The position numbers and the translations under genes are program-made. From Kudoa neothunni (lineage: Eukaryota > Animalia > Cnidaria), in assembly GCA_964304625.1 (NCBI GenBank), contig OZ199840.1:1712332-1776331 (forward strand): a DNA stretch of 64,000 nt. Direction: 5' to 3'. Each line of letters starts with the position of its first letter. Position 1 is the first letter of the stretch. This document shows positions 6,827 to 61,229 of the stretch, piece after piece. A model generated the notes under the pieces. It saw only the letters and a list, made by a program, of their open reading frames with translations, ran no database searches and was not told the origin of the DNA.

Positions 6827-9808
6827 ATGAAGAGTCAAAGTTATTATTTCGGGATTTTTCTTATTCTATACTGTAAAAATATATATTTTTACTAAAATTT
6901 TTGTGATTTTAATAGTAAAAATTTTTCTTCTAAATGCAGAAGTTGCAAGTCCTGCTCCGGTAACGACGGTTAACTCACTTTCATACAAAATTGAGAAAGT
7001 TGATGAGAATATGAGGGTCCATTTAACATTTAGTGGTGGAAGTTACTCTTCTTCACAAAAATGCTACATTAAAAAGTCTAATGAGGCTGGCGTAGCCTAT
7101 GCAGAGATCAATCCTTGCCCTGAAACTAATTCCGAGGCTGGAGACAACAAATGCGTTATAACGTGTAATGGGAGTGATAATAAATTTACATTTGACGGAT
7201 TTTCACCAAGAACAAAATATATTGAAGTTTTTGACGCGAATGGTATTACAGAAGCTGCTGGAAAAACCACCGGTGGAACTGTCCTTGGATTAGAGATACG
7301 TAAATTTATATTGTTATAATTTTTAAATAATATTTATAGCGCTTTTGGTAAATCCACAAGTTTCAGTAAGTATTACAAATGATAAAAAATTGCAATTAAG
7401 GACGAAAACATGTAAACAAGTTGCATGTCCCATATACTACAAGGGTATTCAATATGTTGCAGGGACAGCTGGGAGTAGTTGTATTGCACATAACAGTGCT
7501 AATGAAGTAGAATTTGATATAATGATACCACATTATGAAATGAAATGCGAGGGTTATCCTAGTTTCTTTTATAAATTGCGAAATAAACATACTTTGATGA
7601 ACACCGATGTTTATATACCACAGTATTATGTGACATACAGCAACACTGAAAAAACAAAATACTTACTAAAATTCACTAATAAATTTCCATTTGAAATTTG
7701 CCGGTTTGGAATTAAACTACTGTCAACTCAAATTACTTCTCAAACATCTAATGAGTACACTTCGAATTGTGGAGGGGCAAATAAACCTTGTTTTGCTCCA
7801 TGCAATAATGTGGAACTTATTTTCACAACTTCCAACAGCGTTATTGAGATATTGATTCAAACGAGATATTTCTCACTACAAAAAAATACCGACGGTAATA
7901 GTTACGACGGTTATAAACAGAAGAAATTTGGTAATTAATGAATAATTATTATTGAATCAACTATATTTAGTTGTTTCTAAAACTATTGATAGTGGCGATT
8001 CTGTTGAATTATTATCAGCTTACTCCGCTACTGGTGTTACATTAGATGTGCGTTTATTTAATCCAACTGCTAACCCAAAATTTACATCCTGTACCGTAAG
8101 TTATTACGCTGCTGATAAACCTGCATCAATTGCTACAAGTGCGATGTGTACTGTTAATACTAATGAGCAGGATTGTGCTACTACATGTACTGATGCGTTA
8201 ACAATATCACGGTTACCTAGCGGGAAACCGTATATACTTGAAATAAAGGCAGCGACAACAGAACCTTCAACTAATGGAGTCCCCTCTGCGTTTATAGAGC
8301 ATATATTTTTTAGAACGAGTAAAAATAAAAAAAACTTATTAAAAATTTAGAATCATTTAGAACAAGCCGAAGCAAACACATTTCCCGACGTTACACCAAC
8401 CTTACGTGATACGAGTTTAAGTATAAAAGCACTTGAGGTTACAATTGAAGCTTCAAAAGACGATATCACCTGTGCCTACTACCTTAGCCCTCGAGGTAAG
8501 GATGTTTACGTATGTGCAATGTGTCAAGATAGTTATCCTTGCAGAGGATACTGTAGAGAGCCTCAAACTATTATGGGATTAAGCCCAGGAACAGAGTATG
8601 ATCTTAAAATAGTTGCACACAAAGATTACGGTATCAAAGTTCACGGAATTACTACAAGTAAAAAAATGCTGATGTGAAATTAAATAAATAATTGTTAAGC
8701 AATGTCAACACTTAGACTCGAAAAGAAATTTTTGGACAAAGGTTTCAAAGTGATAGGTTCATTGTTATCGCCACATCCAACGGCTGTTTGTCATTACAAA
8801 ATAAAAGTTAAGGTAGGCGAATCATATGATTTAATACACGAATGTCCTGCAGCACCTCCAGTAGGAAACACTGAAAATGCTCCTTCAAAATCAGTACTCT
8901 CTAAAATAGGAGTGGCTAGATCGGCAAACCAACCATCAACAAATCTAACACCCACAACTACCAACGTCGCAATTCCTAATTGTCGAACATTGCCTTTATG
9001 CAACAATATCGTATTCAGTGAAGGATACGAAGCAGAAAAGGAATACCAGGTTTTAGTGACTGCTGTCGGTAGGTCCGTTGAAGTTCCAATAAATATACCC
9101 AAAAGTAATAATTTTTCATCTAAAATTATATCTATATTTACGAATAAATATACCTTTTGAAAAAAATTATCCAAATTTATTAATAAATGAATTTGTTATA
9201 AATGTAATTTACTAGTTTAATAACAAAGGTTAAATTAGACCCTCTTCTTAAATCTCCTGAGGACCCTACAAAGGAAATAGCAGTGGTGATCACACGTGTT
9301 GACAAAACTTTAAGTGTAAAAACAACACTGCCAGAAAACGTGAATTCAAATTCGGTATGCAAATGGAAATTAACAAATTCGGAGGATACTTCTAATCCGA
9401 TCGTAAAAAAATGCATGGCAATTGGTAAAGGTTGTACGGTGTTTCCTCCATGCAAAGAATTCACCATTAACGAAGTCGAAGATACCAGCAATTATCACTT
9501 GGCAGTATTTGTTAGTGGAAACGAACAAATTTATGGAATTGGGGAAATAAATCAAGGTAGCTTATTTTTATTGCTTTATCAAATTTTCAATAATATTAAT
9601 AAAAATAGGCGAAGCCTCAAACAAATCTACGTAACTTTAATATGTGAATATCATTATACATTTATTTAGATCTAAAAATTCGATGTAAAGTAACCTGGAA
9701 TTACTTTTTTTAATTATCATATTTAGAATTGTTGCAGTTATAGTTCCAGTTGCTATCGTTGTAATCGGAATTGGTTTCTACTTTGGTTACTGGAAAAATA
9801 GAAGTTAG
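6827..9808 (+). CDS. Cys-rich FnIII-like repeat type I membrane protein, paralog A (~835 aa, 10 exons)
   Basis: Exons 6827-6872, 6916-7299, 7340-7930, 7971-8318, 8361-8657, 8700-9104, 9239-9556, 9609-9630, 9670-9684 and 9727-9808 join in frame via GT-AG introns. N-terminal signal-like segment MKSQSYYFGIFLILYLKIFLLNA; FnIII-like motifs GLSPGTEYDLKIVA, LPSGKPYILEIKA, GYEAEKEYQVLVTA; C-terminal TM IVAVIVPVAIVVIGIGFYFGYW then KNRS-stop. Confidence 0.85.
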
Positions 9809-11469: not shown

Positions 11470-13020
11470 TTAGGGTTCTATTTCATTGTATCTTGGTGGA
11501 CGGGTGTAATTATTGAATTCCATCTTCCATATATACGTATCAAAAATTCCACCTTCAAGGATCTAAAGGTTAAATAATTATTATTTATAAAAATAAAAAA
11601 CTACCAGTCGAGAATCATTGATGAGAGTGAGCGTTTGGATTTGTTTTATAATTTCGGGTATCTGGAAAGAAATAAGATTTTTACATTGTTCACAAGAGAT
11701 TGTTTAAGTCGGTTAAAGTTTGAAAATCGGAATCGTTCAAGGGATTTTCTCATAGTATGAACATTAGGAAAGTCACCAATATGGACGCCATGTTTTTTCG
11801 ATAGCTCGACGTAGATATTACGCAAATTATCGAGTAAGTAACGTTTGGTTTCGTCTTCGTTAAAAAATGTGGTTTCGTTTTTCAAATAAGACACAATATA
11901 GGCATTAATCTACACCATAGATAAAATAACACCACCAATAAAAATTTACAATTGCAAGATGAGCTCGTTTGATGAAATCATTGATCTTACTTAGAAGGGC
12001 TGTTTTTGGTAGATTTTTAATTTCATTCAGCAGTTCTATTTGTTCATTATCGAACAGATTTGTAAATGTTTGGTTATCATAGTTGAAAATCCCTCCGAAT
12101 GTGCCGACATACACTCTGGGTGTTTCGGCCGAATTGAACAATTGTGTAAGATTCCACATAAACGAACCATAAATCCGCATCAATTGTTGGCTATTGTAAC
12201 TAGATAAATAAATAAAAATCGTAAACGTTTTATCCTTAACCACATTCACTTACATTTCAGCTTTGTTCAGCACCATTCTAACTTTGGTTAGATGGGGTGA
12301 TAGCATTTTTAGTAATTCTAACTCTTGAAATGAGAAATTGATCTTTTGACAATCAAACATGAATATAATAAGATCAGCTTTTTCTACGAACCATCGGATT
12401 GCTTGTTGATAGCTTAATTTGCGATCTTGATTGTCCTTGGCTGTGAAAATCAATCCAGGTGTATCAATCACAGTTAAACGTTCAAGAATTGGATTGTCCG
12501 ATTCGATGCATTGCATTTTTTCCAAAAAACTGTTTCCAAACTGAGCGAAATCGCTGTAACTTTTAGTACTATCACTTGCCAGTAGATTCCCAGGTATTGC
12601 TCTATTTTGCTGCCCATGAACTATTACATTAAATTGTTGGGTGGTGGGTTCTGGTCCAATTCGAGACGATTTATATTCATCATTTAACAAATAGCGAATC
12701 AGTGATGTTTTCCCTGAGCAAATCTGACCCATAATCAAAACAATTGGCACATGTGTAAATTGTTGAGGGGTTAATTTTGGCGAAATCAATCTCTGAAAAC
12801 AATAACTATTTTCCAACGGCCACAGTACAGTCTCATACAGATGGTGTAAATTGGCAAAGAACTTTTTCAAAGAGAATAAATCATGTGGTGATTCTTCTTT
12901 TAACTTGTTATTGTGCTTATTTTTGGCAGCGCCGTTACAGGTATATTGCGTAGTAGGTAGACAAAAACAACCTTTTTTCATGAGTAAGTTCCCTAATACT
13001 CCATTATCATTGTTGGCCAT
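11470..13020 (-). CDS. Divergent EHD-family dynamin-like ATPase lacking the C-terminal EH domain
   Basis: GQICSGKTS P-loop, IGPEPTT, DTPG, NKAE, QQLMRIYGSFMWNL, PRVYVGTF. Introns 12200-12253, 11910-11949 and 11563-11604, plus a 23-nt intron or 1-nt frameshift at 11662-11684. The last exon ILEGGIFD...EIEP-TAA stops before any EH domain. Confidence 0.85.
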
Positions 13021-16000
13021 AGTTAGAAGATTAACCAAACTTATGTTAAAGACAACCTACAAAATCTATAATTTAATACGGCTTAGTCTTATGGCCTTAA
13101 ATACAATACATTACAACTGCCTTATTCCTTTCTAAATTAAAAATCTAGTCAACAATAATAATTAATATATGCACCTAGCAAAAATATAACTTTAATGTAA
13201 ATAATTATCAAATTAATTGAATTATTATTAATACACAAAGAATTAAAAAAATATACCCGGTTGGAACTGGTTTTAATATTAATCCACAGATGGACTACTC
13301 CTTCCATACATTTACCATGTTCATCTACTATAAAAAGGCAAGAGTGATTTAACAAAACGCATTGATATAAAAACAAATGAATATCACGAATCATGAGATT
13401 TCATGAAAGTTTAAATATTCAAATCAACATCAACGCTTCATCAATTTACAGATTTGTTGTTTCTTAATCTATTCATTAATAGTTTAAATAATACTCCTGA
13501 ATTCATAATTAGTTTTATTAACATTAAAAATATTGAAATCTGTATTAGTTGATACTTTACTCGATTGAAAAATTCATTTCAATTTAACTAATAATATAAT
13601 AAATATTGTCTAATAGCTTTTGCCAAGTAGAATGTAATATTTGTCGCTCTATTAACTTTTAATTATATTAATATATATATATATATATATTTTATTATTT
13701 TAGATTCTGGATATGATCTACTAGAGATTAATAAATATTTCTATATGTTTCTATGCCAAAAAATTACAGAAATTATAATTTAATGGTAAAATTTCGTGAT
13801 TTGTATTTTTAGTCAAATTTATTACGATATTAAAATAAACTTAACTTAGTCCAAATTTTACTATAAAACAGACGATAATATTTTACAATAATTTTAGAAA
13901 AGGTTTGTGATATTTAATTATATGTTTGATATAAACGTACTCTAACTTTATATAATAATGCGCATGCGCTAGAAATTCAAAATATTTTTGCGATAATTTT
14001 TTAAAATTGTGCGAATTTACACGTAAAAATATATAAAAGTTTGAAAGATTTATTTTAAAGTAAAATGAGTATAAAAGATGAAATAGACAACGACTTAAGC
14101 TTAATTAACTTAGAATACAACCATATTTTTTATGAAAAAAATTCACTTTAATATATTAATTTTTCACCATAATCCCTATAAGTTTGTTATGACATGATAA
14201 TTCTTTTTATTGGAAGTTTTAGTAGAAATTATTCTGCAATTTAGTTTTGTATAAATATCACCGGGAAACAGTATTTAAACGATTAATAATGCACTATTAT
14301 TTAGTGGTGTGAAAGTATTTTTAAGCCTCAATATAGTGAGGGTTAATTCTAATGTCTTTAAATTCGCCTTGAGAGGTTTTAGTCCCAATTGAACTAATTG
14401 AATTATGATACCTATTAATCATTTCACCTCTTTTCCCTAGGATACCCTTATTATAGGGTTTCTCAGTTAACCTCGCCACTTTCGCATTCAAACTCATTAT
14501 TTGCAATTAAACACGATATTTTTTATTTAAAATCGGCATTTTCGTATCGAGGGCGATGCATCTTTGACAGGGCATTTGTTTGTTGGGAAATATTCATAGA
14601 ATTTGGACCATATTTTAACAGTGACTCCTGAAAGAAATGTTTGTCTTCTGATTCTAGAAATTCAATATCTGAGAATTATTTATTATCAACTTCTCATCTA
14701 CAAACACCAAAGTGAAACCATCTCTTCGGTTTTATCTCCTCTGTCCGAAGTGGGTTCCATTTGGGACCCCAATTTCATCATTTTCATGTTACTCCGAAAG
14801 TAAACTGCTGATTCCTTAACTGTTCCATGAATGTCTCACAGGGTTAACAAGTTTGTATAAAAGCTGTAATTTTGTTTATAATTTAAAAAATACGCTTTAA
14901 AGATTAATTTTATTTCATAATCTGGGTATTTGTTCTAATAGAATTTCAAAAAAATGACCCCTTTTATACATATTAATCTATTTTACTCACTTATATTTAT
15001 AAATTTTGTTTAATTTTTTTTTAAGCCATACATATGTATGTTTTTATATACTTCGACTTAATAGGAGATCAACGAGAACTAATACGTGTCAAGTTTGACT
15101 TGTAGGCTCTTGTTTCTCTAAAATTCCTCATTTATCGACAATAAACTAATACATGATTCATTATATGAAATATAAATATAGAATCCTCGTGTATTGTTTG
15201 GGGATTCCGTAATTTTTATACAGAATAATATAAATTGGTAGAATGTAAAGTAGTCGGAAAATGATTGTTCTGTTGCTAATTTATTAAAATAAACCATAGG
15301 ACATATAAATAATTTTTAAAAATAGTCATAAGTAATGGCTAATGATATTTTTATTTAGTATATATCAATAGTTAAAGCATCGTGCGTTTATTGATTATTG
15401 ATATCGACATGTATGTGCTACGAATTATTCGCATAGAAGCGTTAAACGTATGTTTCACCAGTTCCATTAATGTGGATACCAAAATATTTAAACTACTTAG
15501 GTTACCTCAAAATAGATTGTTTATCGTAACCATACTAACTCTTAAAAATGAAAATAAATTAAGAATTAATTCGTAAAAACTTAAATGAGCCACTAAGCAA
15601 TAAAGCTTTTATAATTTTTTTATTCTACTTTTGAAGACATTCAAATGATGTGAATCTTTCAAACATTGATTTCTATGAAGTCTCAGAATAAACTGATTGC
15701 GCGGCTACATTTCCTACTCCCGAAACAGTTCGTACAATAATTTCTACAGAACGGTGCTTAGTTGAGTTTATGTTTCATCTTCATCTGTTAATTTTTTATG
15801 GAATCTAGTCGGTTAAAATAAATGTTTATTTCGTTTAGACTTGTTCAAAATCTTTAGTGCTGAAATTTATGCGCTGATTTCATCACATTAGTCCAAAACT
15901 TTAAATTCATATCGGCCTGGTATCTGCATTTTAGGCTACCGGAGAGAGTTAGATTTAATTTTTTATACTCACAAATTTCTTTAAATAATATCACGTTAGA

Positions 16001-19224: not shown

Positions 19225-20132
19225 TAACAAATTATAGGATAAGCTAATAACAATAAAAACAAAAACAAATGAGTTTTAATATGTTGAAGTTTTCTTTAAA
19301 ATATAAGATTAATCAAAATGATATGTCATTATATTTTATCGCATTCAGCGATATCAAATTGAACAATTACATGAAACTCACACTTATTTATGACATTATT
19401 TAAATACTGTATAGATTCATCGTAATATTCTGTAAAAAATGAAGATTCTTTAATGAAATAATGACTAATATTTATCATTATAATTATTAATGACCATTGC
19501 AGTATACTTTTAAATATTTTAATTTCTATCCACTTGAGTACACAGCTACACATACTAAATTTTTCCTTGTGCTATATTTGTATATTGTAATATATTATTT
19601 CGAATTCAACTATCAGTAGTAAACGATGAGAAGTTTAATTTTATTATTTTTAATCACAAAATTTTTTTAATTTATATTTTGAGTTATTTTGCATCATAAC
19701 ACAGCCTATTCTCTAGAATTGAAATTAAATGGTTTTACATATACATAAATAATGAACGTCGCCAAAACAATAGCTTATATTACATAGTTCAATAAAATTA
19801 TCGATATCAACCGAGCCAAATTTCCATTTATTTATTGTATTCTATATATACAAGCAGGTAATGCGGCGAAGAACAATATTTAGTCTGGATTTTTTTTAAT
19901 TATCGAAGAGATGTACCTAATTTTAACTATATATTTTCAATTAAATTTAAAAAGTTTTTAATTACAATCAATCGAATTATAATTTATTAAGATGAATTAA
20001 CAAATCCGAAATGTTATTATTAATGCATTGTTTATTTGAAAGGCAAATATAATTCTATATATATATGTATATATGAATTAAAATCCGATCAAACTATTGA
20101 TATTCATATTGAACGACAACTCTAATTTTTCG

Positions 20133-23092
20133 ATGTCACAGACTACGTTATCAGGCTGGCTCTATTTATTAGGGATTTATACTTTTTCTTGTGTATACAT
20201 ATTTATATTGTAAGACTCATTGTAAATAAAAATAGTCTATATTCCACTTCTACCCAAAGTACAAGGTCAGGTAGGAGCTCCAAATCAAGTTGCTACTGAA
20301 AACTCTTTAAAATACAAACTTGTTGAGGATGCACAGGCAATTAAAGGTCAATTTAGTATTGAGTGGAAGAGACTATCCCGCGTCGAAAAAGTGCTATATT
20401 AAAAAATCGAATGATGATATCACGAACCTTGTCGATATTGATACCACTGAATGCGCTATTGATGGTTCACAAAAAGTTTCTGGAAAATGTGTTATAACAT
20501 GTTCAGGAAATGGAAAAAACTTAGCTTTTGATAAATTCTCCCCAAGGACAAAATATATTGCAGTTTTTACTCATGAAGATGCAGAGACGGCCTCAGGGAA
20601 AAGCAGCGGTGGGGCAGTCTTTGGTCTTGAGCTGCGTAAATAAAGCATTTAAAATATTATGGTAAACTTCTTTTAGAATTATTGGTGAATCCGCGAGTTA
20701 CAATAACAAAACATAAAACAAAATTGAGATTGAGGACAAAAACTTGTAAACCAGTGAAATGCCTCATATTCTATAAGGATATGCTATATATAGAAGGAAG
20801 AGTTGGAAGTACCTGCGTCACAAGTATTGATAGTGAATTGGAGTTTAATTTAATGATTCCTCATTACGAAATGAAATGCGATAATTATCCCAGTTTCTTT
20901 TATAAACTTCAAAATAAATACACTTTGTCAAACATTGATATTTATAAGCCACAGTATTACGTGACTAAAAAGTTGAATACGGCAAATAGATATTTTCTGA
21001 AATTTACAAACAAATTTCCTTTTGAAATGTGTCTCTTCAATATTAGAGATCCGTCAGCTAAACCAACAAACCCAAATACCGATGGCTTCACGTCAAAGTG
21101 TAGTTCAACCGAGAAAAAATGTTATGCACCATGTAATAATGTTGAACTTGAGTTCACAGCTTCCAAGTCTCTTGTTGAAATATTGATTCAAACCAGACAT
21201 GTACCGTTGAATAAATATGAAAACGCCTATATTGGTTATATTCAGCAAAAATTTGGTAAAGTCGTGGATAAAATTAACTTTGATAATCTTCTTATAGTTA
21301 TCACCGAAACATCAGATAATGTCTTGTTGACAGAACATTCACCCACTGGTGTAACATTAAAAGTTTCCTTGTTTAAACCATCTGATGGAGCTCGATTTTT
21401 CAACTGTACTGTAACTTATTATGAAGCAGACAAACCAGAAATTGCACCCGGTGCTCCTCAAAGGGCAAAATGTTCTAACAGCCATCGAAGCTGTCAAACA
21501 GCGTGTACTACTGCTCTAACGATTACAGGGCTTGGATAGCGGAAAACCATATATAATTGAAGTTGCAGCAGGCAACAAAGGTGGCAAGCTTAGAAACTTT
21601 AAGGAACATCTATTCTTTCGAACGGGTAATATAATATAAAAAATATTTTTTAAAATAAGTGTATAGAAAAAAAATCTGGATCTGACTTCTCTGGAACAAA
21701 CCCAGCAGTAAAGGATACAACCGTATCAATTAAAGCAATAGATGGAACTAAAACACTTACAGATCAAGAAGAGACTTGTGCTTATTATATTAGCCCTCGT
21801 GGAAAGGATGTATATGTGTGTGCGATGTGCGAAGAGAGTTATCCTTGCAGGGGTTTTTGCAAGGATTCTCAAAATATTCTAGGTTTAATACCTGGAACTG
21901 AGTATGACCTAAAGGTAGTTGCACACGAGGGATTACGGAGAAAAGTATACCGAATTCGAACATGTATATAATTATTTAACTATGAATTAAATAAGTAATT
22001 CCGTTTCAAGTATTGTCCACGCTTACACTTCGATCGGAATTTATAGAAAAAGGCTTCAAAGTGACCGGTGCAATTTCAACACCATATCCTACAGCTGTTT
22101 GTCATTATAAAGTAAAAGCAAAGAAAGGGCAAGAATTCGTGCCGATCTATCAATGTCCACCTTTAGCTTCCACAAAAAATACTGGTGCATCCTCCATCGA
22201 GTCTACATCTTCTAAAGCAGCAGTGGTTAGGACAGCTAATGGAAAACAAACACAAGATGCACCTTCGTTAAATGAAAAACCACATTCACTCCATGCACAC
22301 AAGCACCATTATGCACTAATATAATATTCAGTGAAGGATACGAAGCAGACAAGGAATATGAAGTTTTAGTTACGGCCGTCGACAGGTCTGTTGAAACTCT
22401 CATCAAGATACCAATTAGTAATAAAACATCAAATTTTAAATTAATATCTTTTATATTTTGATTACATTTTTGAAGCTAATAAAAATATTTACATTAATTA
22501 CTGTTAACCTATATATTAATTTAGACCCAGTGCTAAATTTTAACACGAATAACACCATGAAACTAACCGTGGTGTTTCAAAGGGAAAACAATAATATAAT
22601 AGTTAAAACTTCTCTTCCCTTGGGAGTGATGAGGGACTCGTTATGCAGATGGGAATTGAGAAATTGGGATGATCCATCGAAAGCAATCGTCCAAAAATGT
22701 ATGGTGGCAGGTGAAAAAGATTGCTCGGCGTTTCCATCATGCAAGGAATTCACAATTTTAAATGTGGGGAACACCAACAACTACCGTCTGATTTTATTTC
22801 ACAGTATAGATGATAATATCGCTGGTTTCGCTGAAATTAACAAAGGTACTAAATAAAAACGTTATTCTACATTATTAATGAATAATTTAATAGACGATGA
22901 ATCGAATAAATCAATGTAAAGTGAACTATTCGTCTTCTTATTAATTTATTTTAGGTCAAAAAATGCAATGTACCTATTTACGAAATTATCCTGTTAATCA
23001 ATTATTTTAGAATTATTGCAGTAGTGGTCCCAGTGCTCATCGTGGTTATTGGTGTAGGATTCTATTTCGGATACTGGAAAAATAGAAGCTAG
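20133..23092 (+). pseudogene. Cys-rich FnIII-like membrane protein, paralog B (frameshifted as assembled; pseudogene or consensus errors)
   Basis: Same 10-exon structure as paralog C. Single-base run-length indels relative to C at ~20188, 20336, 21534, 21930, 21942, 22277, 22626 and 22633. Confidence 0.7.
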
Positions 23093-23371
23093 AATCGAAA
23101 TTAAATGGTTTTACACATACATAAATAATGAACGTCGCCAAAAACAATAGCTTATATTACATAGTTCAATAAAATTATTGATACCAACCGAGCCAAATTT
23201 CCATTTATTTATTGTATTCTATATGTATATATATATAAGCAGGTAATGCGGCGAAGAACAATATTTAGTCTGGATTTTTTTTAATTATCGAAGAATGTAC
23301 CTAATTTTAACTATATTATTTTCAATCAAATTTAAAAAGTTTTTAATTACAATCAATCGAATTATAATTTA

Positions 23372-26300
23372 GGCTGTGTCTATTTTGCCGGACGCGCTTT
23401 TTCTCTTAAAATAATAATTCAATCACTACAATTTTTTCCTAAAAAATATCTTTTATAATTGCAGAATATAAATTTAGTTTTCATTAATTCAGTGACAAAT
23501 TTTTACATAGCTAATTTGTATCCATAATATCCAATGAAAATACAGTGAAGTAAAACTATTTGGCCAATTCGTATTTAAAACTTTTATAATTAGGTAAATG
23601 TTTTTATCAGATGATTGATACACCACTAAAATTTAATAAAATGTTGAGTATTCTACTTTAAATAATAAATGTTTGAAATTATCTTGTATTGCAACGCCAA
23701 ATAATTGGGGGACTGTTTAACTTCCACATAAATTATATTTGAATATAATATATCGATATTGGTGTTGTTATTATTACTACTATCATCATTACCATAATCA
23801 TAATTTTCTTTTTTTTCTTAAACCAATAACTGTTTGAAATACACCTTTTGGTCTACCTCTCAATTTCACTACTGTTGGCAGCTTAATTCCTATAATTTTA
23901 TGAATTTAACAAAATGGACAAAAGATACACACCCTTCAAAGATGGATTTTTAGTTGTGGTATTATCTACAATATTCGGGATCTCCATATCAATTATTGAT
24001 GATGGAACATTATCATCAACTGCTTCTAGTATATCCTCATTCTCTAATCGTTATTCCTCAGTAACTAAACACGAAATAAAAATTCTACTAAAGACAATAT
24101 CATTAATTACATGCTGGGATTAAAATCTCTTGATTGTTTTCGTCGACAGATTCAGACGTCAACTTGAACTAAATTAAGATGATATATTAATAGTAGAATA
24201 AATAGTCACTTTATCCAGAGAATCCCCATTGGAAATAAGAGAGTTTAATTTACCTAGAATCTTTTTTAATGAATCATATTGACTCCCTGTTTTTTCAGAC
24301 CCTAGCGAAGCTATTTTCTTACAAAGAATTTCTAGCTCCCTGTATCGCTTTAAAGCCGAATTCGGAACGGGACACTGACTCGAAATTTCTGTAATACTTG
24401 GTTGCACACAACACGAAGGATTTTGAAGATATAAATTTTTGGTCATTTGAATAAATGACAGGTAATATTCTTTGTGTCACCTCTTATTACAAATTTTCTC
24501 TTCATATAAATTGATGTTCATTATTTTTCTAGCGTAAATAATATGCCTACATGGTAACTCCATACTTACGTAGAAACAACATGTACAACTATTGGGATCA
24601 GGATTGGCATAGGATTCGATATGATTATTTATTTCATCCTGCATAATATTATACGCATATGAAGTCAACAATGTTTTATGTTGTTCGTTAATGTCTGAAT
24701 TTAATTTCTCAACAGTTTGGGTTGTCCACTCTCTAACTGCTTTACTCTCACGCTCAGTCCTCATACTTGATAAATAAATAAGCAGATCGCTGAAAAAGAC
24801 TTCAATTGTTGAGAATTTTTTTATGATTTGTTTAATTTTGGAATTTATGCATTCTAATCGATTATTTGTTCTATTTAAAAAGTACCCTTTAGGTTCATAT
24901 ATGCCGGGCACCATTCATGTTTGATTGGATCCCAAGATTTGTTATAAGTAATGATTTTTTTGTTACATGTCTTATTTAACAATTCATGGTAATTTTCATA
25001 AATTTTTGGATCATTGGTATTGCAAAGCTTTTGAATCAACTCTAAGGCAGTTTTTCTTTCGGCTTTGTTTATTCCCATTCTTAATGTAGAGATTTCTCTC
25101 CCAAATGTTCTTAAGACATGGTACAGGCATAAGTTTGTACTTACGTTAGGAAATATAGATCTTATAGAGTTTCTTTCAATCATGTCTTTATCCGTAATGA
25201 AACAAACTGTTTTGGTTGACATTTCCTCGTTATGTTTAAGTAGAGATTGACATAACCAGGTAACAGTCACGGTACTCTCCTCAGATAAAAGAGCAATAGC
25301 TCCTATTTGACTTTGCCCAAAGGAATCGATAAACAGACATATATACAATGGCATACGATTATTGATTAATTTATGAGTGGCATCCATAAATACTAGTTCG
25401 GGAAATTTTTTAATAACGTTTTTCATATAAAGGTCTTGGAAAAATATTCCAGTCATTTCATTGGAGTTATTGTGCAATATTTCGATAGTTGCATTTTGGT
25501 GAGAATTTTTTATTGAATTAAACAATTCCGAAATATCCAACGAAACCTTTTTTTGTGATTGGTTTATGATTTCTAATTGTACTCCTTTTAAATTTCAATC
25601 ATAAAAATGAACATTTTTTATAAGATTCTTGCTTTCTTCATCTAATTTTCTATTCATTGGTAACAAATCCCTAAAATGCTCATTTCTGTTGCAGCTGTGA
25701 GTAAGATCCAATTTTCTAATAACTAACATATTCATGTATTTAGGAACTCGCAGTGTAATGAAGAAATTGCAACCACTTTTATGGCTGTTGATTTTTCTCT
25801 TCCCAGCACTTTTAGATTGTATCTGAATTCAAATTAATTGCATCAATATTTATATAGATGATTACATTTTTACCACCATGAGCACAACAAAAAGTGGCTT
25901 CATAATAAACAAGATCAGAGTTCATGTCTCTATCAAATTTTTTTAGGGCTGTTGAGATTTTTCTAGAGACTCGGATCCAGTAACAAAAGTTGTTCCGCTT
26001 TGAGTATTTATCCATAAATTCATTAGCCTATTCAAAGTTTGTAAATGCATTTCCGACCATAGGTTCAGATGTAATATCCTGAATTAGTAGTGTTTGATCA
26101 GACTCTCCTTCCATAGTGATTCTACTCGCGACTATCAAAGTTACAACCGCACGCTAGAGGGTATTTTACTCGTTTATGCTGTTATAACACATAAAATTAG
26201 ATTAATTATATAAATAATACAGATTTATAAAAATTTAATGTCATTTATAATAATACTTATGAATGAGTTTAAAATATCCTCGATGTATTTTGATACCTAA

Positions 26301-26429
26301 TTATTAATTAAAAGATAAATGAAACTAAATTTATATTCTGCACTTATAAAAGATATTTTTAGGAAAAAATTGTAGCGATTGAATTATTATTTTAAGAGAA
26401 AAAGCGCGTCCGGCAAAATAGACACTGCC
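23372..26429 (-). mobile_element. Mutator-like (MULE) DNA transposon, full length, disrupted transposase
   Basis: ~113-bp TIRs (GGCTGTGTCTATTTTGCCGGACGCGC... 23372-23485; inverse at 26318-26429). 9-bp TSD TATAATTTA at 23363-23371 and 26430-26438, with the empty site at ~19978. Transposase motifs FMDATHK, FITDKD, LCLYHV, SWIM finger CTCCFYVSMELPCRH and N-terminal FCCAHGG. In-frame TAG near 26030 and frameshifts. Confidence 0.95.
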
Positions 26430-26586
26430 TATAATTTATTAAGATGAATTAATAAATCCGAAATGTTATTATTAATGCATTGTTTATTTGAAAGGCAAAT
26501 ATAATTCTATATATATATATGTATATATGAATTAAAATCCGATCAAACTATTGATATTCATATTGAACGACAACTCTAATTTTTCG

Positions 26587-29544
26587 ATGTCACAGACTAC
26601 GTCATCAGGCTGGCTCTATTTATTAGGAGTTTATACTTTTTCTTTGTGTATACATATTTATATTGTAAGACTCAGTGTAAATAAAAATAGTCTATATTCC
26701 ACTTCTACCCAAAGTACAAGGTCAGGTAGGAGCTCCAAATCAAGTTGCTACTGAAAACTCTTTAAAATACAAACTTGTTGAGGATGCACAGCAATTAAAG
26801 GTCAATTTAGTATTGAGTGGAAGAGACTATCCCGCGTCGAAAAAGTGCTATATTAAAAAATCGAATGATGATATCACGAACCTTGTCGATATTGATACCA
26901 CTGAATGCGCTGTTGATGGTTCACAAAATGTTTCTGGAAAATGTGTTATAACATGTTCAGGAAATGGAAAAAACTTAGCTTTTGATAAATTCTCCCCAAG
27001 GACAAAATATATTGCAGTTTTTACTCATGACGTCGCAGAGACGGCCGCAGAGAAACGCAGCGGTGGGGCAGTCTTTGGTCTTGAGCTGCGTAAATAAAGC
27101 ATTTAAAATATTATGGTAAACTTCTTTTAGAATTATTAGTGAATCCGCAAGTTACAATAACAAGACATGAAAAAAAATTGAGATTGAGGACAAAAACATG
27201 GAAACCGGTGAAATGCCCTATATTTTACAAGGACGTAGAATATGCACAAGGAACAGTTGGAGGTACTGGCGTCACGAGTATTGATAGTGAATTGGAGTTT
27301 AATTTAATGATTCCTCATTATGAAATGAAATGCGATAATTATCCCAGTTTCTTTTATAAACTTCAAAATAAATACACTTTGTCAAACATTGAAATTTATA
27401 AGCCACAGTATTACGTGACTAAAAAGTTGAATACGGCAAATAGATATTTTCTGAAATTTACAAACAAATTTCCTTTTGAAATGTGTCTCTTCAATATTAG
27501 AGATCCGTCAGCTAAACCAACAAACCCAAATACCGATGACTTCACGTCAAAGTGTAGTTCAACCGAGAAAAAATGTTATGCACCATGTAATAATGTTGAA
27601 CTTGAGTTCACAGCTTCCAAGTCTCTTGTTGAAATATTGATTCAAACCAGACATGTACCGTTGAATAAATATGAAAACGCCTATATTGGTTATATTCAGC
27701 AAAAATTTGGTAAAGTCGTGGATAATTTAACTTTGATAATCTTCTTATAGTTATCACCGAAACATCAGATAATGTCTTGTTGACAAAACATTCACCCACT
27801 GGTGTAACATTAAAAGTATCCTTGTTTAAACCATCTAAAGGAGATCGATTTTTCGAATGTACTGTAACTTATTATGAAGCAGACAAACCAGAAATTATAT
27901 CCGGTGCTCCTCAAAGGGCAATATGTTCTAACGGCAATCCACACTGTGAAACATGGTGCTCTACTGATCTAACGATTACAGGGCTTGATAGCGGAAAACC
28001 ATATATAATTGAAGTTGCAGCAGGCAACAAAGGTGGCAAGCTTAGAAACTTTAAGGAACATCTATTCTTTCGAACGGGTAATATAATATAAAAAATATTT
28101 TTTAAAATAAGTGTATAGAAAAAAAATCTGGATCTGACTTCTCTGGAACAAACCCAGCAGTAAAGGATACAACCGTATCAATTAAAGCAATAGATGGAAC
28201 TAAAACACTTACAGATCAAGAAGAGACTTGTGCTTATTATATTAGCCCTCGTGGAAAGGATGTATATGTGTGTGCGATGTGCGAAGAGAGTTATCCTTGC
28301 AGGGGTTTTTGCAAGGATTCTCAAAATATTCTAGGTTTAATACCTGGAACTGAGTATGACCTAAAGGTAGTTGCACACGAGGATTACGGAGAAAAAGTAT
28401 ACCGAATTCGAACATGTATATAATTATTTAACTATGAATTAAATAAGTAATTCCGTTTCAAGTATTGTCCACGCTTACACTTCGATCGGAATTTATAGAA
28501 AAAGGCTTCAAAGTGACCGGTGCACTTTCAACACCATATCCTACAGCTGTTTGTCATTATAAAGTAAAAGCAAAGAAAGGGCAAGAATTCGTGCCGATCT
28601 ATCAATGTCCACCTTTAGCTTCCACAAAAAATACTGGTGCATCCTCCATCGAGTCTACATCTTCTAAAGCAGCAGTGGTTAGGACAGCTAATGGAAAACA
28701 AACACAAGATGCACCTTCGTTAAATGAAAAAACCACATTCACTCCATGCACACAAGCACCATTATGCACTAATATAATATTCAGTGAAGGATACGAAGCA
28801 GACAAGGAATATGAAGTTTTAGTTACGGCCGTCGACAGGTCTGTTGAAACTCTCATCAAGATACCAATTAGTAATAAAACATCAAATTTTAAATTAATAT
28901 CTTTTATATTTTGATTACATTTTTGAAGCTAATAAAAATATTTACATTAATTACTGTTAACCTATATATTAATTTAGACCCAGTGCTAAATTTTAACACG
29001 AATAACACCATGAAACTAACCGTGGTGTTTCAAAGGGAAAACAATAATATAATAGTTAAAACTTCTCTTCCCTTGGGAGTTGATGAGGACTCGTTATGCA
29101 GATGGGAATTGAGAAATTGGGATGATCCATCGAAAGCAATCGTCCAAAAATGTATGGTGGCAGGTGAAAAAGATTGCTCGGCGTTTCCATCATGCAAGGA
29201 ATTCACAATTTTAAATGTGGGGAACACCAACAACTACCGTCTGATTTTATTTCACAGTATAGATGATAATATCGCTGGTTTCGCTGAAATTAACAAAGGT
29301 ACTAAATAAATCGTTATTCTACATTATTAATGAATAATTTAATAGACGATGAATCGAATAAATCAATGTAAAGTGAACTATTCGTCTTCTTATTAATTTA
29401 TTTTAGGTCAAAAAATGCAATGTACCTATTTACGAAATTATCCTGTTAATCAATTATTTTAGAATTATTGCAGTAGTGGTCCCAGTGCTCATCGTGGTTA
29501 TTGGTGTAGGATTCTATTTCGGATACTGGAAAAATAGAAGCTAG
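26587..29544 (+). CDS. Cys-rich FnIII-like repeat type I membrane protein, paralog C (~836 aa, 10 exons, intact)
   Basis: Exons 26587-26647, 26691-27089, 27131-27709, 27751-28077, 28119-28415, 28463-28870, 28978-29298, 29346-29367, 29407-29421 and 29463-29544 sum to 2511 nt in one frame. Intron positions match paralog A. Motif GLIPGTEYDLKVVA; ends IIAVVVPVLIVVIGVGFYFGYWKNRS. Confidence 0.85.
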
Positions 29545-29699
29545 AATTTTTTTTTGAAAAAACACCTCTATTAATTAACGTTTAATTTAATGATAATTTT
29601 AATATCAACATAATAATTTATTATTTATCAGATGATTTTGTTTATTGGCAACAAATATAATGTTCAATAACTTTATAAATACGTATTATTGCGAAAATA

Positions 29700-31838: not shown

Positions 31839-33543
31839 TCATGCTTTGGAGGAGTGGGGTATTCTCAAATGATCAGGTAGTTCGTCTGGCATTGCCACAC
31901 CTTCACGACCCAGTTTACAAAGATAATAAATAAGAGCGAATTCGTCACGCGACAGTTTTCCGTCACGATCAGTATCAACAAGATTCCAAGCTTGAGCAAG
32001 GACTTTGGTGGACAGTTTGGTTTTCATGAGTTCTTCTCTGACCACATGGCCATCTAGCAGACCGTTGGTGGTGGGGTGGGAATCGAAAATCTAAACAAAT
32101 TTAAAAACAACCAAAAATCAAGTCAACTAATACTTGATCAGATGGTTCTCTGTATTTGTTAACAATCCAAGCCTCACTATTTTTGCCATAGTTGATACCA
32201 ACTTCGGCTCCAGCTGAAAATGGATTGTATTCATTTTCGGTGCGATATTTACCAATTTTCTCTGAGAAAATGCCTCCTTTGATAGCCTAAACACAACCAT
32301 ACTCAATTAGAATACGAAAAGCAACATCAACAACTACTCTTTCCTCTGCTGTAACCTGATTCTCATCCGGTATACGTTTGAGTAGTTCAGGAATTTTATT
32401 GTAGAGAAGATCGGTTGCTCTATCAACTAGTTTTTGGTTGAATGTTTTGAGTTTACTGAAATCAACATTGACCAAAACTTTTCGCATATTATCAACTGGA
32501 GGAAAATCTCCTGGTGAGATGGATTTTTCGAATTGGATTTTCTTGTAGAGTTCGTCCAAATTTTTGATAAGCTCAGCTTTTTTCTTATCTTTACCGAACA
32601 ACGGCATCTCCTTGGCTAGTGTTGAGACAATGTACGCATTGATAATAACGTAACGAATTCTTTTGATGAAATCATTCAACTTTCGAATGGCAGCATTTTT
32701 GGGGAGGGTTCTGATTTCTTCTAGAAGGTCGTCTTGTTCTAGTTGGAACAGATCTCTGAAATCAACATTGTTCAACGCGCCATCCCAGAAACTACCAATG
32801 TACACTCTGGTGACCTCTGGGGTGAGGATTACTTTTCCTAACGACCACATCAAAGCACCATAAACTCGCATGAGTTGTTGATTGGAGACTGAATCTGCTT
32901 TGTTCAAAATCAAACGTATTTTGGAATCGTATGGACGCAGAGTTTCAATGGTTTTTTTGAATTCGTCAGAAATGTCCAACTTGTGTGAATCAAAAAGCAA
33001 CATAATCAAATCGCATCGTTCCGCAAACCATGTCACAACACCAGTAAAATCGTAACCTCGTTGAATAGTTTGTTTATCACCAGCAAGGATTCCCGGTGTA
33101 TCAACCAAAGTGACACGTTGTAAAAATTCGTTGTTAGCCTCAGCACAACTTAGCCTATTCAAAAAACTATTTCCAAAATAGTCCAACGAGCAGAATTGTT
33201 TAGATTTATCACTGGCCAACGCATTTCCTGGTATCACCCGATCTGTTTCACCATACATTATCACATTGAATCCATCGGTTGTTGGTTCCGGCCCTATTCT
33301 CATTCCTGGATAGTCTGAGTTGAGTAGGTATTTTATGAGTGATGTTTTTCCAGTCGAATACTGTCCAATAAATAGAATCATTGGTGCGCAATCAAAATCT
33401 GATTCTTGCATTCTAGGTGCTTGCAACTCATTGAATTTGTAATATTCTTCCAACCGAAGAAGATTGTCCATATAGTGAACTTTAAGCTCCTCGGCTACAG
33501 TTTGGTAAACTTGTCTGTCATCTTTTTTTCGTAGAGTTACCAT
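31839..33543 (-). CDS. EHD1: EH domain-containing protein (EHD1/Past1/RME-1 family)
   Basis: GQYSTGKTS, RIGPEPTTD, DTPGIL, LLFDSHKLDISDEF, LNKAD, QQLMRVYGALMWSLGKV. Introns 32287-32337 and 32091-32133. Linker NPF and EH domain LAQAWNLVDTDRDGKLSRDEFAL. Confidence 0.95.
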
Positions 33544-51432: not shown

Positions 51433-52000
51433 TTCTCTTTCGAGTTATTCGTTTTACTCTATCACTTATATTAGTCTAATATTAAAATAATTTATTCCTA
51501 TCTATTATATATTGTTTATCTTATCGATTTTATTATTATTTGCTTGCGAATTAAGTTAGAACTGAGGCTGATTTAATTCGAATTCATATCATTTCGCCTC
51601 ATTTTTTGATATTATTATTATTAATTTTCGGTGGAATTATTTAAAGATATATTTATAAATTTTTAATTAATATTAATTTTATATTAAAAAAATATGAATT
51701 ATCATCTCCATAATAAATTTAAATATATATTGTTATTTTGATTAGACTAATTTTAACTCAACGGAAATTATTTTTAGGAAGTGGCTATGGAAACGGATCA
51801 TAATATCCAAGTTAATGTAGTTTTGATTATAGTAAATCATTAATTTCAATAACAGCGAAACGTGGACTAAAACTAGTTAAATCGATACATATCATGTGAA
51901 TAAGGGTTCGTAGGATTAAAAATTTTCATCGAGTATGTGTTAATTTGATAATACCTAAGTTCCTAGAACGGGCACGCAATAATTAACCACCTTAACGGAA

Positions 52001-53150
52001 ATGAATAACGTTTTTTTAAAAATATTTGAAAATAATCCTAAACTGAAAATTTTTTATGTTGGGTTCTTGTTGCTAATTGTCAACTTTATTTTGGCTGGTT
52101 ACAATGTGATTACATCATTCTATGTGAAAGAAAAGAACGATTTATGGCTCGTAACATTCTACAGAGTGCTTATCGCCACTCCGATTAGCATACTCATGGC
52201 ATTATTGGTTGAGGGGAAATTCAAATTATGGTATAATCAATGGTGGTAATTTTTTGTAAAAGTTTAATAGTACATAATCGTCTTTTTGTATTAATTTAAT
52301 TTCTATTTATCTTTTTTCCCAATTTTATTCAAATAAAATTTTATTTAATATATAACATTTTAGTTCGATGCTTTTCTTTGTCGTATTTGGAGTTACCTCT
52401 GCAGCATTATCTCCAGTCATGTATCTGATGGGTATTGAGTATACTGATGCAGCCTACATGTCTATATTAACTCAAGTGATACCTATTTTTTCGTCAATTT
52501 TGTCTATAATTTTGAAAATGGAACCGTTTCCATCAATACAAGATAAATCCACAATTGTGAGGTTTGTTGGTATTGTTTTTGGAGTTGGTTTTGCTATTGG
52601 AATTAGTGTGGTTCCATTGGTAGACACTCCTCCCAATTTTATCATCAAAAATTGGATTAATGGGACAATTATTGCAATAACCTCCAATTTGATATTCTCT
52701 TGTTATTTGGTGCTACAAATGAAATTATTCTACAGAAATCCAGATAGTTCTCTTCAACTTAAACCTTTCACTGTTAATTGTTTATGCACTCTCTACGGAA
52801 CCGTCGTCTATTTTATTATTTTTGGCATATATTTCTGGATAAAAAAAGGAAACCTACTACACGATAATGATATTGCTATTCCTGCTTTCTATTCTGGAGT
52901 GTTGACCGTTGTCGTTGGATATGGTCTTCTAACCTACTGCATAAAGCACTCGTCGGCTATTATTTCAAGTTGTCTATTTTCGATCCAGATCGCAACCAGT
53001 CTTGTTCTATTGAGGTTATTCAAACGTGCCAGTCTAACCACCACACAATATTTACTATGTCCATTTTTACTACTTTCAGGCTTAATGGTTGTATTTTCGC
53101 CATTACTCAATCCCAAAAAACCCTCCTCGCCAGCAATGAAGCTGAGATAA
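52001..53150 (+). CDS. EamA/DMT (MtN21/WAT1-like) transporter, paralog 1
   Basis: About 10 hydrophobic helices; FYRVLIA, YLMGIEYTDA, QVIPIFS, FYSGVL motifs. One intron, ~52246-52363. Confidence 0.85.
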
Positions 53151-53480
53151 AGTGGCTTAATTAAATGCGAAATAACTCGTCCATTATTTTCCTTTTCAAT
53201 ACATTTCAAAATGAAAATATGTCGTATTTATATATATATATATATATATATACAAAAGAGAACTATCGATGTGTTGGTTTTTATATGTGCTTCTAAGTAC
53301 ACCTGTGAGGGGAAAAATATTTTTCCTTATACACAGATGTCTATGGAACTTAAAATAATTTACACTAACATAAAAAATCTTTTTCTGTTATTGAAATTTA
53401 ATGAGATCTAAATAATTTAGGAAATGGTGATGGTATCGGTTTAGGATTGGTTTAGGGAAAAGGTTACTGGCACGGTAAAG

Positions 53481-60769: not shown

Positions 60770-61229
60770 CTACGAAATAATTAGTCTATTATATTTCTAT
60801 ATGGAAACTATTTTGTTTCTTTGAATATATTTTAAATTATAAGTATATTCTATTGACAGATATTTCTGGATATTACGCAACAAAAGAGATCACGCAATAT
60901 TCAGGTTATGAACATACGTAAAATAAAGCTTTTGCAGAATTTTATTACAATAACCAATGCATTGGTTTAACATAGTTTTTATGGGTTGTACGACGATTCT
61001 ATATTTTAATATATTTAAAATAATAATTTTGAAATATGAACATTGAATGAGACCGCTTGGATCCTCTATTTTAATATTGCTTTCAAGTTTTTCCGATGCG
61101 TGTATCGATCCGGAGGTTGAATCTTTTTCTCATCTTAATTATGTTCACCATACGCGAAAATGTATTATAGAACGGTTTTTTTGTTTACAAGATAAAACTC
61201 CTGCCGCAACCTATTTATTACCACCGATT

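What the first reader, a model, noticed from the sequence alone, without database searches (positions are those of the whole stretch)
27785..27970. Hypervariable patch in exon 4: replacements far outnumber silent changes between near-identical paralogs
Comparing B (21331-21520) with C by hand: SDGARFFNC...EIAPGAPQRAKCSNSHRSCQTACTTAL versus SKGDRFFEC...EIISGAPQRAICSNGNPHCETWCSTDL. I count about 15 amino-acid changes against 2 synonymous ones, several via 2-nt codon changes, and every cysteine is kept. The following ~1.5 kb, introns included, differs by only a couple of substitutions plus single-base indels. This pattern is expected from diversifying selection on loops of a disulfide-locked scaffold.
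Basis: partly seen in the sequence, partly recalled or inferred. Interest (0 to 1): 0.8.

Follow-up and report, generated by a model that had tools for sequence, protein, structure and literature searches.

The report
Fast-changing loops in twin surface genes
Two neighbouring, almost identical copies of a surface-protein gene of the tuna parasite Kudoa neothunni differ mostly by amino-acid-changing substitutions packed into the loops of one fibronectin-III-like domain; this hints at selection for diversity, but it rests on one gene pair in a low-coverage assembly.

Summary
In 27785-27970 (exon 4 of gene C) versus 21332-21517 (gene B) there are 22 substitutions: 15 amino-acid replacements, 2 silent changes, 7 codons with two changes, and all four cysteines kept. 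The rest of the 3.1-kb tandem duplicate differs at about 0.5% (clustering P=3e-10).

The genes are 10-exon, single-pass members of a very large FN3-like surface-protein family, which this scan has already met on other DNA of this genome. The genome is the published Kudoa neothunni assembly.

The replacements fall in columns that are hypervariable across the family (P=1.7e-4), mostly in predicted loops.

Support for dN/dS>1 is moderate:
- The patch alone gives 3.2, P=0.077.
- Loop codons give 16 replacements and 0 silent changes. Family loops have a silent share of 0.265, so P=0.007, or about 0.12 after correcting for 17 pairs.
- Family loops average pN/pS 0.89.
- A site-model test is strong with a whole-exon tree (LRT 74) but weak with local trees (LRT 7).

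No donor for either version exists in the genome. The neighbouring exon-3 patch has dS 0.375 and looks like gene conversion.

Copy B carries many 1-bp indels, which may be consensus errors at about 7x HiFi coverage. Reads could not be obtained.

Verdict: probably diversifying selection plus concerted evolution. It is not proven.

The parts
27785..27970 (+). The patch in exon 4 of gene C: 22 substitutions against copy B, of which 15 are replacements and 2 are silent
21332..21517 (+). The counterpart of the patch in gene B
27751..28077 (+). Exon 4 of gene C, encoding one FN3-like module of 108 full codons (27753-28076). Predicted loops: residues 26-34 = 27828-27854, 43-55 = 27879-27917, the cysteine-stapled loop 59-72 = 27927-27968, and 92-99 = 28026-28049
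26587..29544 (+). Gene C: 10 exons (26587-26664, 26726-27089, 27131-27709, 27751-28077, 28119-28415, 28463-28870, 28978-29298, 29346-29367, 29407-29421, 29463-29544). Uninterrupted 830-codon frame, hydrophobic N-terminus, one membrane span, tail GFYFGYWKNRS
20133..23092 (+). Gene B, the upstream tandem copy. In the assembly its frame is interrupted by single-base length differences at or near 20188, 20336, 21534, 21931/21940, 22274 and 22628/22633. All of these are B-specific when compared with 11 other paralogs
27136..27280 (+). The second divergent patch, at the start of exon 3. Sd 9.5, Nd 15.5, dS 0.375, ratio 0.41. It looks like a gene-conversion tract or an older tract, and includes loss of a cysteine pair in C (W at 27199-27201, G at 27268-27270)
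27029..27056 (+). A small patch at the end of exon 2: 5 replacements and 1 silent change in 10 codons. It is separated from the exon-3 patch by an identical 41-base intron
23372..26429 (.). MULE-type DNA transposon inserted 157 bases upstream of gene C's start codon. It has about 123-base terminal inverted repeats and a 9-base target duplication. The site is empty in front of B. At least 60 related copies exist in the genome
23089..23095 (+). Junction of the tandem duplication. The 7-base microhomology CTAGAAT contains B's stop codon, and is also present at 19713-19719 and 29541-29547

Best explanation
B and C are true tandem duplicates of a gene for a single-pass surface protein built from cysteine-stapled FN3-like modules, in the myxozoan Kudoa neothunni. 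Exchange between the copies (gene conversion), or simply their youth, keeps most of their length about 99.5% identical. The loops of the third module, and above all the stapled loop between Cys58 and Cys69, have taken up many amino-acid replacements in both copies with almost no silent change. That is what selection for new loop sequences on a fixed scaffold produces.

Shown: the anatomy, the counts, the match with the family's variable columns, and the absence of a donor. Inferred: that selection is the cause, that the loops are exposed and bind something, and that both copies were functional when the changes arose.
For: - Clustering P=3e-10.
- Nd 20 against Sd 2, ratio 3.2.
- Replacement divergence in the patch is 14%. 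Neutral sites of the duplicated unit differ at about 1% (13/1341, P=2e-13). The local silent sites plus the upstream non-coding DNA differ at 2.6% (P=8e-6).
- Hypervariable codons defined without B or C: 15 replacements, 0 silent (P=0.014).
- Loops defined from the structure model: 16:0, against a family silent share of 0.265 (P=0.0073). The next most extreme of the 17 pairs has P=0.18.
- Replaced positions sit in family-hypervariable columns (P=1.7e-4).
- The cysteines are invariant or nearly so.
- Changes arose on both lineages: at least 9 derived in C and at least 7 in B.
- No third copy is closer than 77% to either version, and no short exact donor match was found.
- The site model gives omega about 3 for about 10% of codons, at residues 60, 61, 63, 64 and 68, which include four of the B/C differences.
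- The microhomology junction shows a real duplication.
Against: - Within the patch the excess is not significant (P=0.077).
- The pair was picked because it looked extreme. Corrected for 17 pairs, P is about 0.12.
- Family loops average pN/pS 0.89.
- In 11 independent pairs the Cys loop gives 0.72, with silent divergence also raised (0.49 against 0.27 elsewhere).
- The site-model LRT falls from 74 to about 7 when trees are fitted locally. My model has no synonymous-rate variation and ignores recombination.
- The two silent changes in the patch exceed what the flanks predict, so the patch may be somewhat older than its surroundings.
- B is frame-broken in the assembly.
- There is no read, population or expression evidence.
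Confidence: 0.5

Rival explanations
1. The patch is a mosaic made by gene conversion alone. It is a tract with a different history, either older than its flanks or imported from a copy now lost or unassembled. The loops are merely unconstrained, and nothing is positively selected.
For: - The exon-3 patch in the same pair has dS 0.375 and ratio 0.41.
- Other young pairs are block mosaics, with 0-1 versus 10-24 differences per 100 bases.
- L010 and L013 are 98.4% identical over 612 bases but 82% elsewhere.
- Family loops evolve near neutrality, at 0.89.
- Upstream non-coding divergence is 2.2% against 0.65% in the gene body, which suggests later homogenisation.
- Both lineages carry derived states in the patch.
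Against: - A neutral tract with 22% replacement divergence in its loops should show similar silent divergence inside the same codons. Observed: 0 of 22 silent sites in loops, and 2 of 42 in the whole patch (P=0.007).
- The silent divergence of patch 2 differs from that of patch 1 (P=0.003).
- No donor exists in the 40-Mb assembly.
Confidence: 0.25
2. The patch is a local burst of mutation, for example error-prone repair of a break or some targeted mutagenesis. Only the variants that left the scaffold intact survived, with no selection for novelty.
For: - Seven codons changed at two positions.
- The B-derived changes are bunched, with 5 inside 16 bases at 27933-27948.
- By plain counts, 2 silent changes among 22 is not significantly fewer than the 5 expected from random hits (P=0.09).
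Against: - The changes lie on both lineages and in three separate loop segments, with untouched framework between them.
- They avoid conserved columns.
- No comparable burst is seen in the introns or in the other five modules.
Confidence: 0.1
3. The patch is an assembly artefact. The two versions are alleles, or a haplotype mix wrongly placed in two tandem copies, or consensus errors of a low-coverage assembly.
For: - K-mer coverage was about 7x for a diploid stage, with haplotypic duplication purged (PMC12239612).
- B carries 8 exonic and 2-3 non-coding single-base indels, all B-specific. This is more than its 8 substitutions outside the patches.
- Some transposon copies elsewhere show the same excess of 1-bp indels (L035: 10 indels, 4 substitutions).
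Against: - The junction joins B's stop codon to an upstream site through 7 bases of microhomology. An assembler would not invent this without spanning reads.
- HiFi errors are mostly indels, not substitutions clustered at codon positions 1 and 2.
- The differences track the family's variable columns.
- Even if the two versions were alleles, the replacement excess would remain.
Confidence: 0.1

Closest known systems
Fibronectin type III domain (Pfam PF00041), including engineered 10Fn3 'monobodies'
   Same: The predicted seven-strand sandwich finds 10Fn3, monobodies and Eph-receptor FN3 as its best structural matches (TM about 0.5). The E-strand/EF-loop leucine and the F-strand tyrosine motif (L78, G81-K-P-Y84) are conserved. 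Protein-language-model features point to fn3 clusters (0.94-0.95). As in monobodies, the variation sits in loops on a fixed scaffold.
   Different: The Pfam score is 18.9 bits, below the 25-bit threshold, and the Foldseek E-values are 0.03 or worse. The module has four conserved cysteines and an enlarged, stapled region between strands C' and E, which ordinary FN3 lacks. No sequence relatives were found outside this genome in the length range searched.
The large FN3-like single-pass surface-protein family of Kudoa neothunni, noted earlier in this scan (s1-698963, s1-698964, s1-698985)
   Same: The module type, the phase-1 domain exons, the membrane anchor and the tandem arrays are the same. 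Exon 4 of C matches at least 150 places in the genome (342 candidates).
   Different: This finding concerns one very young pair within that family and how its members diverge, not the family's existence.
Multigene surface-antigen and recognition families that combine gene conversion with positive selection on exposed residues (Plasmodium var/rif/stevor, Giardia VSP, plant NLR leucine-rich repeats, vertebrate MHC and KIR)
   Same: A large clustered family, birth-and-death turnover with broken copies, segmental conversion mosaics, and amino-acid change concentrated in exposed segments. Variable surface-protein families have recently been proposed for another myxozoan, Sphaerospora molnari (bioRxiv 10.64898/2026.02.11.705288).
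   Different: There is no homology to any of them. There is no evidence here for surface exposure, host antibody pressure, switching or expression. Kudoa neothunni lives inside muscle fibres, so what the selective agent would be is unclear.

Membership tests
Fibronectin type III domain (PF00041) | Score at or above Pfam's gathering threshold (25 bits) | tested here: not met
   18.9 bits, E=0.0017, for exon 4 of C. Exon 5 scores 13.9 bits.
Fibronectin type III domain (PF00041) | Seven-strand beta-sandwich that superposes on solved FN3 domains | tested here: inconclusive
   AlphaFold model with pLDDT 77.5 and pTM 0.71, strands 10-14, 17-20, 35-42, 56-58, 73-78, 84-91 and 100-106. The best Foldseek matches are 10Fn3 and monobodies, with TM 0.47-0.52, probability 0.98-1.0 and E at least 0.03.
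Fibronectin type III domain (PF00041) | Conserved EF-loop leucine and F-strand tyrosine motif (I recalled this motif from general knowledge) | tested here: met
   L78 is invariant, and G81, K82, P83, Y84, I85 and L86 are at least 90% conserved in 31 sequences.
Kudoa FN3-like single-pass surface family (undescribed; from this scan's notes) | Homology of the module to many loci in the same genome | tested here: met
   150 scored matches with E up to 5e-10, out of 342 candidates. They cluster on C2 at 7.9-8.6 and 9.8-10.2 Mb, on C3 at 0.86-0.95 and 4.6-4.9 Mb, and on C1 at 16.3-16.9 Mb.
Kudoa FN3-like single-pass surface family (undescribed; from this scan's notes) | Hydrophobic N-terminus, chain of module exons, micro-exons, one membrane span and a short conserved tail | tested here: met
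   10-exon model of C with an intact 830-codon frame, 22- and 15-base micro-exons, and the tail ...VIGVGFYFGYWKNRS.
Variant surface-antigen type system (a functional class) | dN/dS above 1 in exposed segments | tested here: inconclusive
   B/C loops 16:0 (P=0.0073, about 0.12 corrected). Family loops 0.89. Site model LRT between 74 and 7 depending on the tree.
Variant surface-antigen type system (a functional class) | Segmental gene conversion between members | tested here: met
   Block mosaics in L009/L010 and L011/L013, and L010/L013 at 98.4% over 612 bases against 82% elsewhere.
Variant surface-antigen type system (a functional class) | Surface display, host immune pressure, switching or exclusive expression | not testable with these tools
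   No RNA or protein data. The genome paper reports that very few host transcriptome reads map to the parasite.
Simple gene-conversion tract | Silent and replacement sites raised together inside the tract | tested here: not met
   Patch 2 has Sd 2/42 against Nd 20/141. Patch 1 does meet this feature (Sd 9.5/32).
Simple gene-conversion tract | A donor sequence present in the genome | tested here: not met
   The best third copy is 77% (B version) or 72-76% (C version) identical. No short high-identity hit was found at E up to 10.

The most novel reading that the evidence does not exclude
The loop-coding DNA of these modules is the target of a dedicated diversifying mechanism, either localised mutagenesis or templated micro-conversion aimed at loop segments. 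The parasite would then actively generate new surface-loop variants rather than wait for ordinary mutation. This would fit the multi-base codon changes, the bunch of five B-specific changes within 16 bases, the raised silent divergence of loops across the family, and the sharp boundaries of the patch.
Probability: 0.06. Interest if true: 0.85.

Novelty: new member of a known kind. Interest (0 to 1): 0.45.

Why it matters
Myxozoans are economically important fish parasites, and their surface molecules are almost unknown. If the loops of this very large FN3-like family are under selection for change, the family becomes the leading candidate for the interface of Kudoa with its hosts, through adhesion, recognition or immune evasion. 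The B/C pair would then be a natural experiment showing which residues matter.

The case also shows how concerted evolution and diversification can act side by side within one 3-kb gene. It gives precise sites (residues 59-72 of module 3) to test by population sequencing, serology or structure determination.

If the signal does not hold, the pair remains a clear example of mosaic evolution in a young tandem duplicate.

Tried and rejected
I made none by any other route. I used pairwise counts and marginal-likelihood site models instead.
I replaced them with my own M0/M1a/M2a likelihood on fixed nucleotide trees.
- Donor search for both versions of both patches found none.
- The idea that B and C are alleles wrongly placed in tandem is largely rejected because of the microhomology junction.
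- A word-index protein search with exon 3 gave no hits. I did not run the large representative search, because no claim here rests on the absence of relatives.
- The spliced protein was never sent to any search or fold tool. The exons were joined only inside a local script, to check frame, length and cysteine count. All searches were done exon by exon, by reference.
- B was never read through its breaks. Codons touching a break were treated as missing.
- The fish-assembly contig holding a 71%-identical EHD protein (P0003) was not pursued.

Full report
**What the sequence is**

The window is G000:C3:1712332-1776331. G000 has 40,260,978 bases in four contigs. Three of them are 17,154,348, 12,040,071 and 11,048,340 bases long, which leaves 18,219 bases for the fourth.

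The published Kudoa neothunni assembly, recovered from yellowfin-tuna HiFi and Hi-C data, is described as 40.2 Mb in three chromosome scaffolds plus an 18,219-bp mitochondrial contig (PMC12239612). The identification suggested by earlier notes of this scan therefore holds.

Two further results are consistent with it. A conserved EHD gene in the window is only 56-60% identical to cnidarian and bilaterian homologues. The DNA is about 30% G+C, with introns of about 41-107 bases.

The paper states that k-mer coverage was about seven, that the fish stage is diploid, and that haplotypic duplication was purged. This limits what can be concluded below.

**Anatomy**

A self-comparison shows one direct duplicate, 19978-23095 against 26430-29547, 97.5% identical over 3126 columns. 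A further 284 bases upstream (19713-19986 against 23089-23371) are also duplicated. A 3.06-kb insert with about 123-base inverted ends lies between the copies.

The insert is a MULE-type transposon with more than 60 relatives in the genome and a 9-base target duplication. The site in front of copy B is empty.

The duplicated unit runs from an upstream CTAGAAT to the CTAGAAT that contains the stop codon. B's stop codon is therefore joined to C's upstream region through 7 bases of microhomology. That is the signature of a real tandem duplication, not of two haplotypes stitched together.

Gene C has a clean 10-exon model with GT-AG introns and phase-1 boundaries between its module exons. It gives 830 codons and 28 cysteines, with a hydrophobic N-terminus, 22- and 15-base micro-exons, one membrane span and the tail GFYFGYWKNRS. 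The exons were joined only in a local script, to check the frame. Every search was done exon by exon.

Exon 4 (27751-28077) encodes one module:
- Pfam gives fn3 below threshold (18.9 bits).
- An AlphaFold model built from 31 family sequences is a beta sandwich (pLDDT 77.5).
- Its best structural matches are the tenth FN3 of fibronectin and monobodies, at TM about 0.5 with weak E-values.
- Protein-language-model features also point to fn3.
- The module matches at least 150 places in the genome (342 candidates).
- Exon 3 has no relatives in the public protein collection within the length range searched.

**The observation**

There are 22 substitutions in 61 codons: 15 replacements, 2 silent changes, and 7 codons changed at two positions. 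All four cysteines are kept.

Only two substitutions follow in the remaining 1.5 kb. The other differences there are changes in homopolymer length. The apparent runs of substitutions at 28383-28392 and 29081-29086 are pairs of compensating 1-bp length changes.

The clustering has P=3e-10. Outside the three patches the copies differ at 13 of 2738 positions.

**Is dN/dS above 1?**

Within the patch, Nei-Gojobori gives dN 0.157, dS 0.049 and a ratio of 3.2. Fisher's test gives only P=0.077.

Three sharper tests are available:

1. Codons that are hypervariable among 29 other paralogs, defined without using B or C, hold 15 replacement and 0 silent changes (P=0.014). The replaced positions have much higher family entropy than the unchanged ones (P=1.7e-4).
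2. The comparison with neutral sites of the same duplicate is more striking. Replacement divergence in the patch is 14%. The neutral reference (upstream DNA, introns, and silent sites outside the patches) is about 1% (P=2e-13). Taking only the patch's own silent sites plus the upstream DNA gives 2.6% (P=8e-6). This test assumes that the patch is the same age as the reference sites.
3. I fetched 60 more exon-4 homologues and found 17 independent young pairs. I defined loops from the structure model rather than from variability. In those pairs the loops have pN/pS 0.89 and the framework 0.38. The silent share of loop changes is 0.265. B/C has 16 loop changes and none is silent (P=0.0073). The next most extreme pair has P=0.18. 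Corrected for 17 pairs, P is about 0.12.

**Family-level tests are ambiguous**

My own M1a/M2a likelihood on a fixed nucleotide tree gives LRT 74, with omega about 3 for 10% of codons. The selected sites are residues 23, 55, 60, 61, 63, 64, 68 and one FG-loop residue. Four of these differ between B and C. A closer clade of 19 sequences gives LRT 52.

With trees fitted to half-exon segments, however, the LRT drops to about 7 (P about 0.025). In 11 independent pairs, the nine codons between Cys58 and Cys69 have pS 0.49 and pN 0.35, while the rest of the exon has pS 0.27.

So the loops diverge faster at silent sites too. This could be saturation. It could also mean that conversion homogenises the framework more than the loops. 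Either way, a model without synonymous-rate variation will overstate omega. I therefore treat the site-model result as supportive but not decisive.

**Direction of change**

By majority of 11 to 29 outgroup paralogs, at least 9 of the patch differences are derived in C. Examples are K12, I57, S70, D72 and W68, where the family mostly has E/A, K, T, A and E/D.

At least 7 are derived in B, and five of these lie within 16 bases at 27933-27948. In the exon-4 nucleotide tree, C's branch is 0.070 and B's is 0.023. Both copies changed, C more than B.

**Gene conversion**

The pair has a second patch at the start of exon 3 (27136-27280) with Sd 9.5 and Nd 15.5, giving dS 0.375 and a ratio of 0.41. 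Its silent divergence differs significantly from that of patch 2 (P=0.003). It has the look of a converted or older tract, although no donor above 84% exists in the genome.

Other young pairs are block mosaics. Distant members share near-identical 3' parts (98.4% over 612 bases against 82% elsewhere).

Upstream non-coding DNA of B and C differs by 2.2%, against 0.65% for neutral sites in the gene body (P=0.03). This suggests that the gene body was homogenised after the duplication.

Conversion is therefore part of the picture. It cannot by itself explain replacement changes that have no silent changes inside the same codons. Neither version of patch 2 has a donor: the best third copies are 72-77% identical, and there is no short exact hit.

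**Copy B**

In the assembly, B's frame is interrupted by single-base length differences in exons 1, 2, 4, 5 (two), 6 and 7 (two). One of them lies 19 bases after the patch and leads to a stop.

Every one of these differences, and the clear non-coding ones too, is specific to B when compared with 11 outgroups. They outnumber B's 8 substitutions outside the patches.

This ratio is unusual for natural decay. It matches the error profile of thinly covered HiFi consensus. Some transposon copies elsewhere show the same excess of 1-bp indels (L035: 10 indels against 4 substitutions; L033: 6 against 6), whereas the transposon copy between B and C does not.

I cannot tell whether B is a pseudogene or merely poorly polished. 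I did not read B through its breaks.

**Conclusion**

The differences are biological in character, because they follow the family's variable columns and spare the scaffold.

The best reading is diversifying selection on the loops of one module in a young tandem pair whose remainder is kept alike by youth and by conversion. I give this about 0.5.

The rivals are:
- a conversion-only mosaic with unconstrained loops (0.25);
- a local mutation burst (0.1);
- an assembly or haplotype artefact (0.1).

This is a known kind of evolutionary pattern, found in an undescribed parasite gene family that this scan has already flagged elsewhere in the same genome.

Noticed in passing
window 27136-27280 (C) / 20682-20826 (B): A second and denser divergent patch at the start of exon 3, with many silent changes (dS 0.375, ratio 0.41). 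It includes a cysteine pair that is present in B and in copy A but replaced by W and G in C. No donor above 84% identity exists in the genome. The 41-base intron between this patch and the small exon-2 patch is identical in both copies.
   Followed up: partly
window 20188, 20336, 21534, 21931-21940, 22274, 22628-22633 (B exons); 21270, 22855 (B introns): All single-base homopolymer length differences between the copies are specific to B. They outnumber B's substitutions outside the patches. Two pairs compensate each other within 5-10 bases and recode 2-4 residues. They are either real decay or consensus errors at about 7x coverage.
   Followed up: partly
L035 and L033 (MULE copies at G000:C2:2026522-2029635 and C2:11052966-11056077): Some transposon copies have more private 1-bp indels than private substitutions (10 against 4, and 6 against 6). 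This suggests regional consensus errors in the assembly, and it matters for every 'broken gene' call made in this genome.
   Followed up: partly
window 19713-19719, 23089-23095, 29541-29547: The 7-base microhomology CTAGAAT lies at both ends of the duplicated unit and at its junction. The duplication breakpoint sits exactly on the stop codon.
   Followed up: yes
window 20677-21625 (B exon 3, intron 3, exon 4): In B, intron 3 is 42 bases long (41 in C) and has no stop. Exon 3, the intron and exon 4 therefore form one open frame (ORF 20682-21539).
   Followed up: no
window 6903-9808: A third and much more distant family member (copy A, about 45% identical in exon 4) lies about 10 kb upstream in the same orientation. 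The locus is therefore a small array.
   Followed up: no
L010 2717-3328 versus L013 50-660; L005 2693-3324 versus L013 41-673: The 3' parts of otherwise 80-82% identical family members are 94-98% identical. This indicates concerted evolution of the membrane-proximal end across the C2 8-Mb cluster.
   Followed up: no
window 51941-53191 versus 59559-60797: A second and older duplicate (84% identical) carries two multi-pass membrane-protein ORFs of 260 and 266 residues.
   Followed up: no
window 12250-13038 (-) and 32287-33543 (-): There are two EHD/dynamin-type G-domain genes in one window. The second is 71% identical to a protein annotated on a 61-kb contig of a fish assembly (Pempheris klunzingeri), which may be a Kudoa-like contaminant there. 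I did not pursue this.
   Followed up: no
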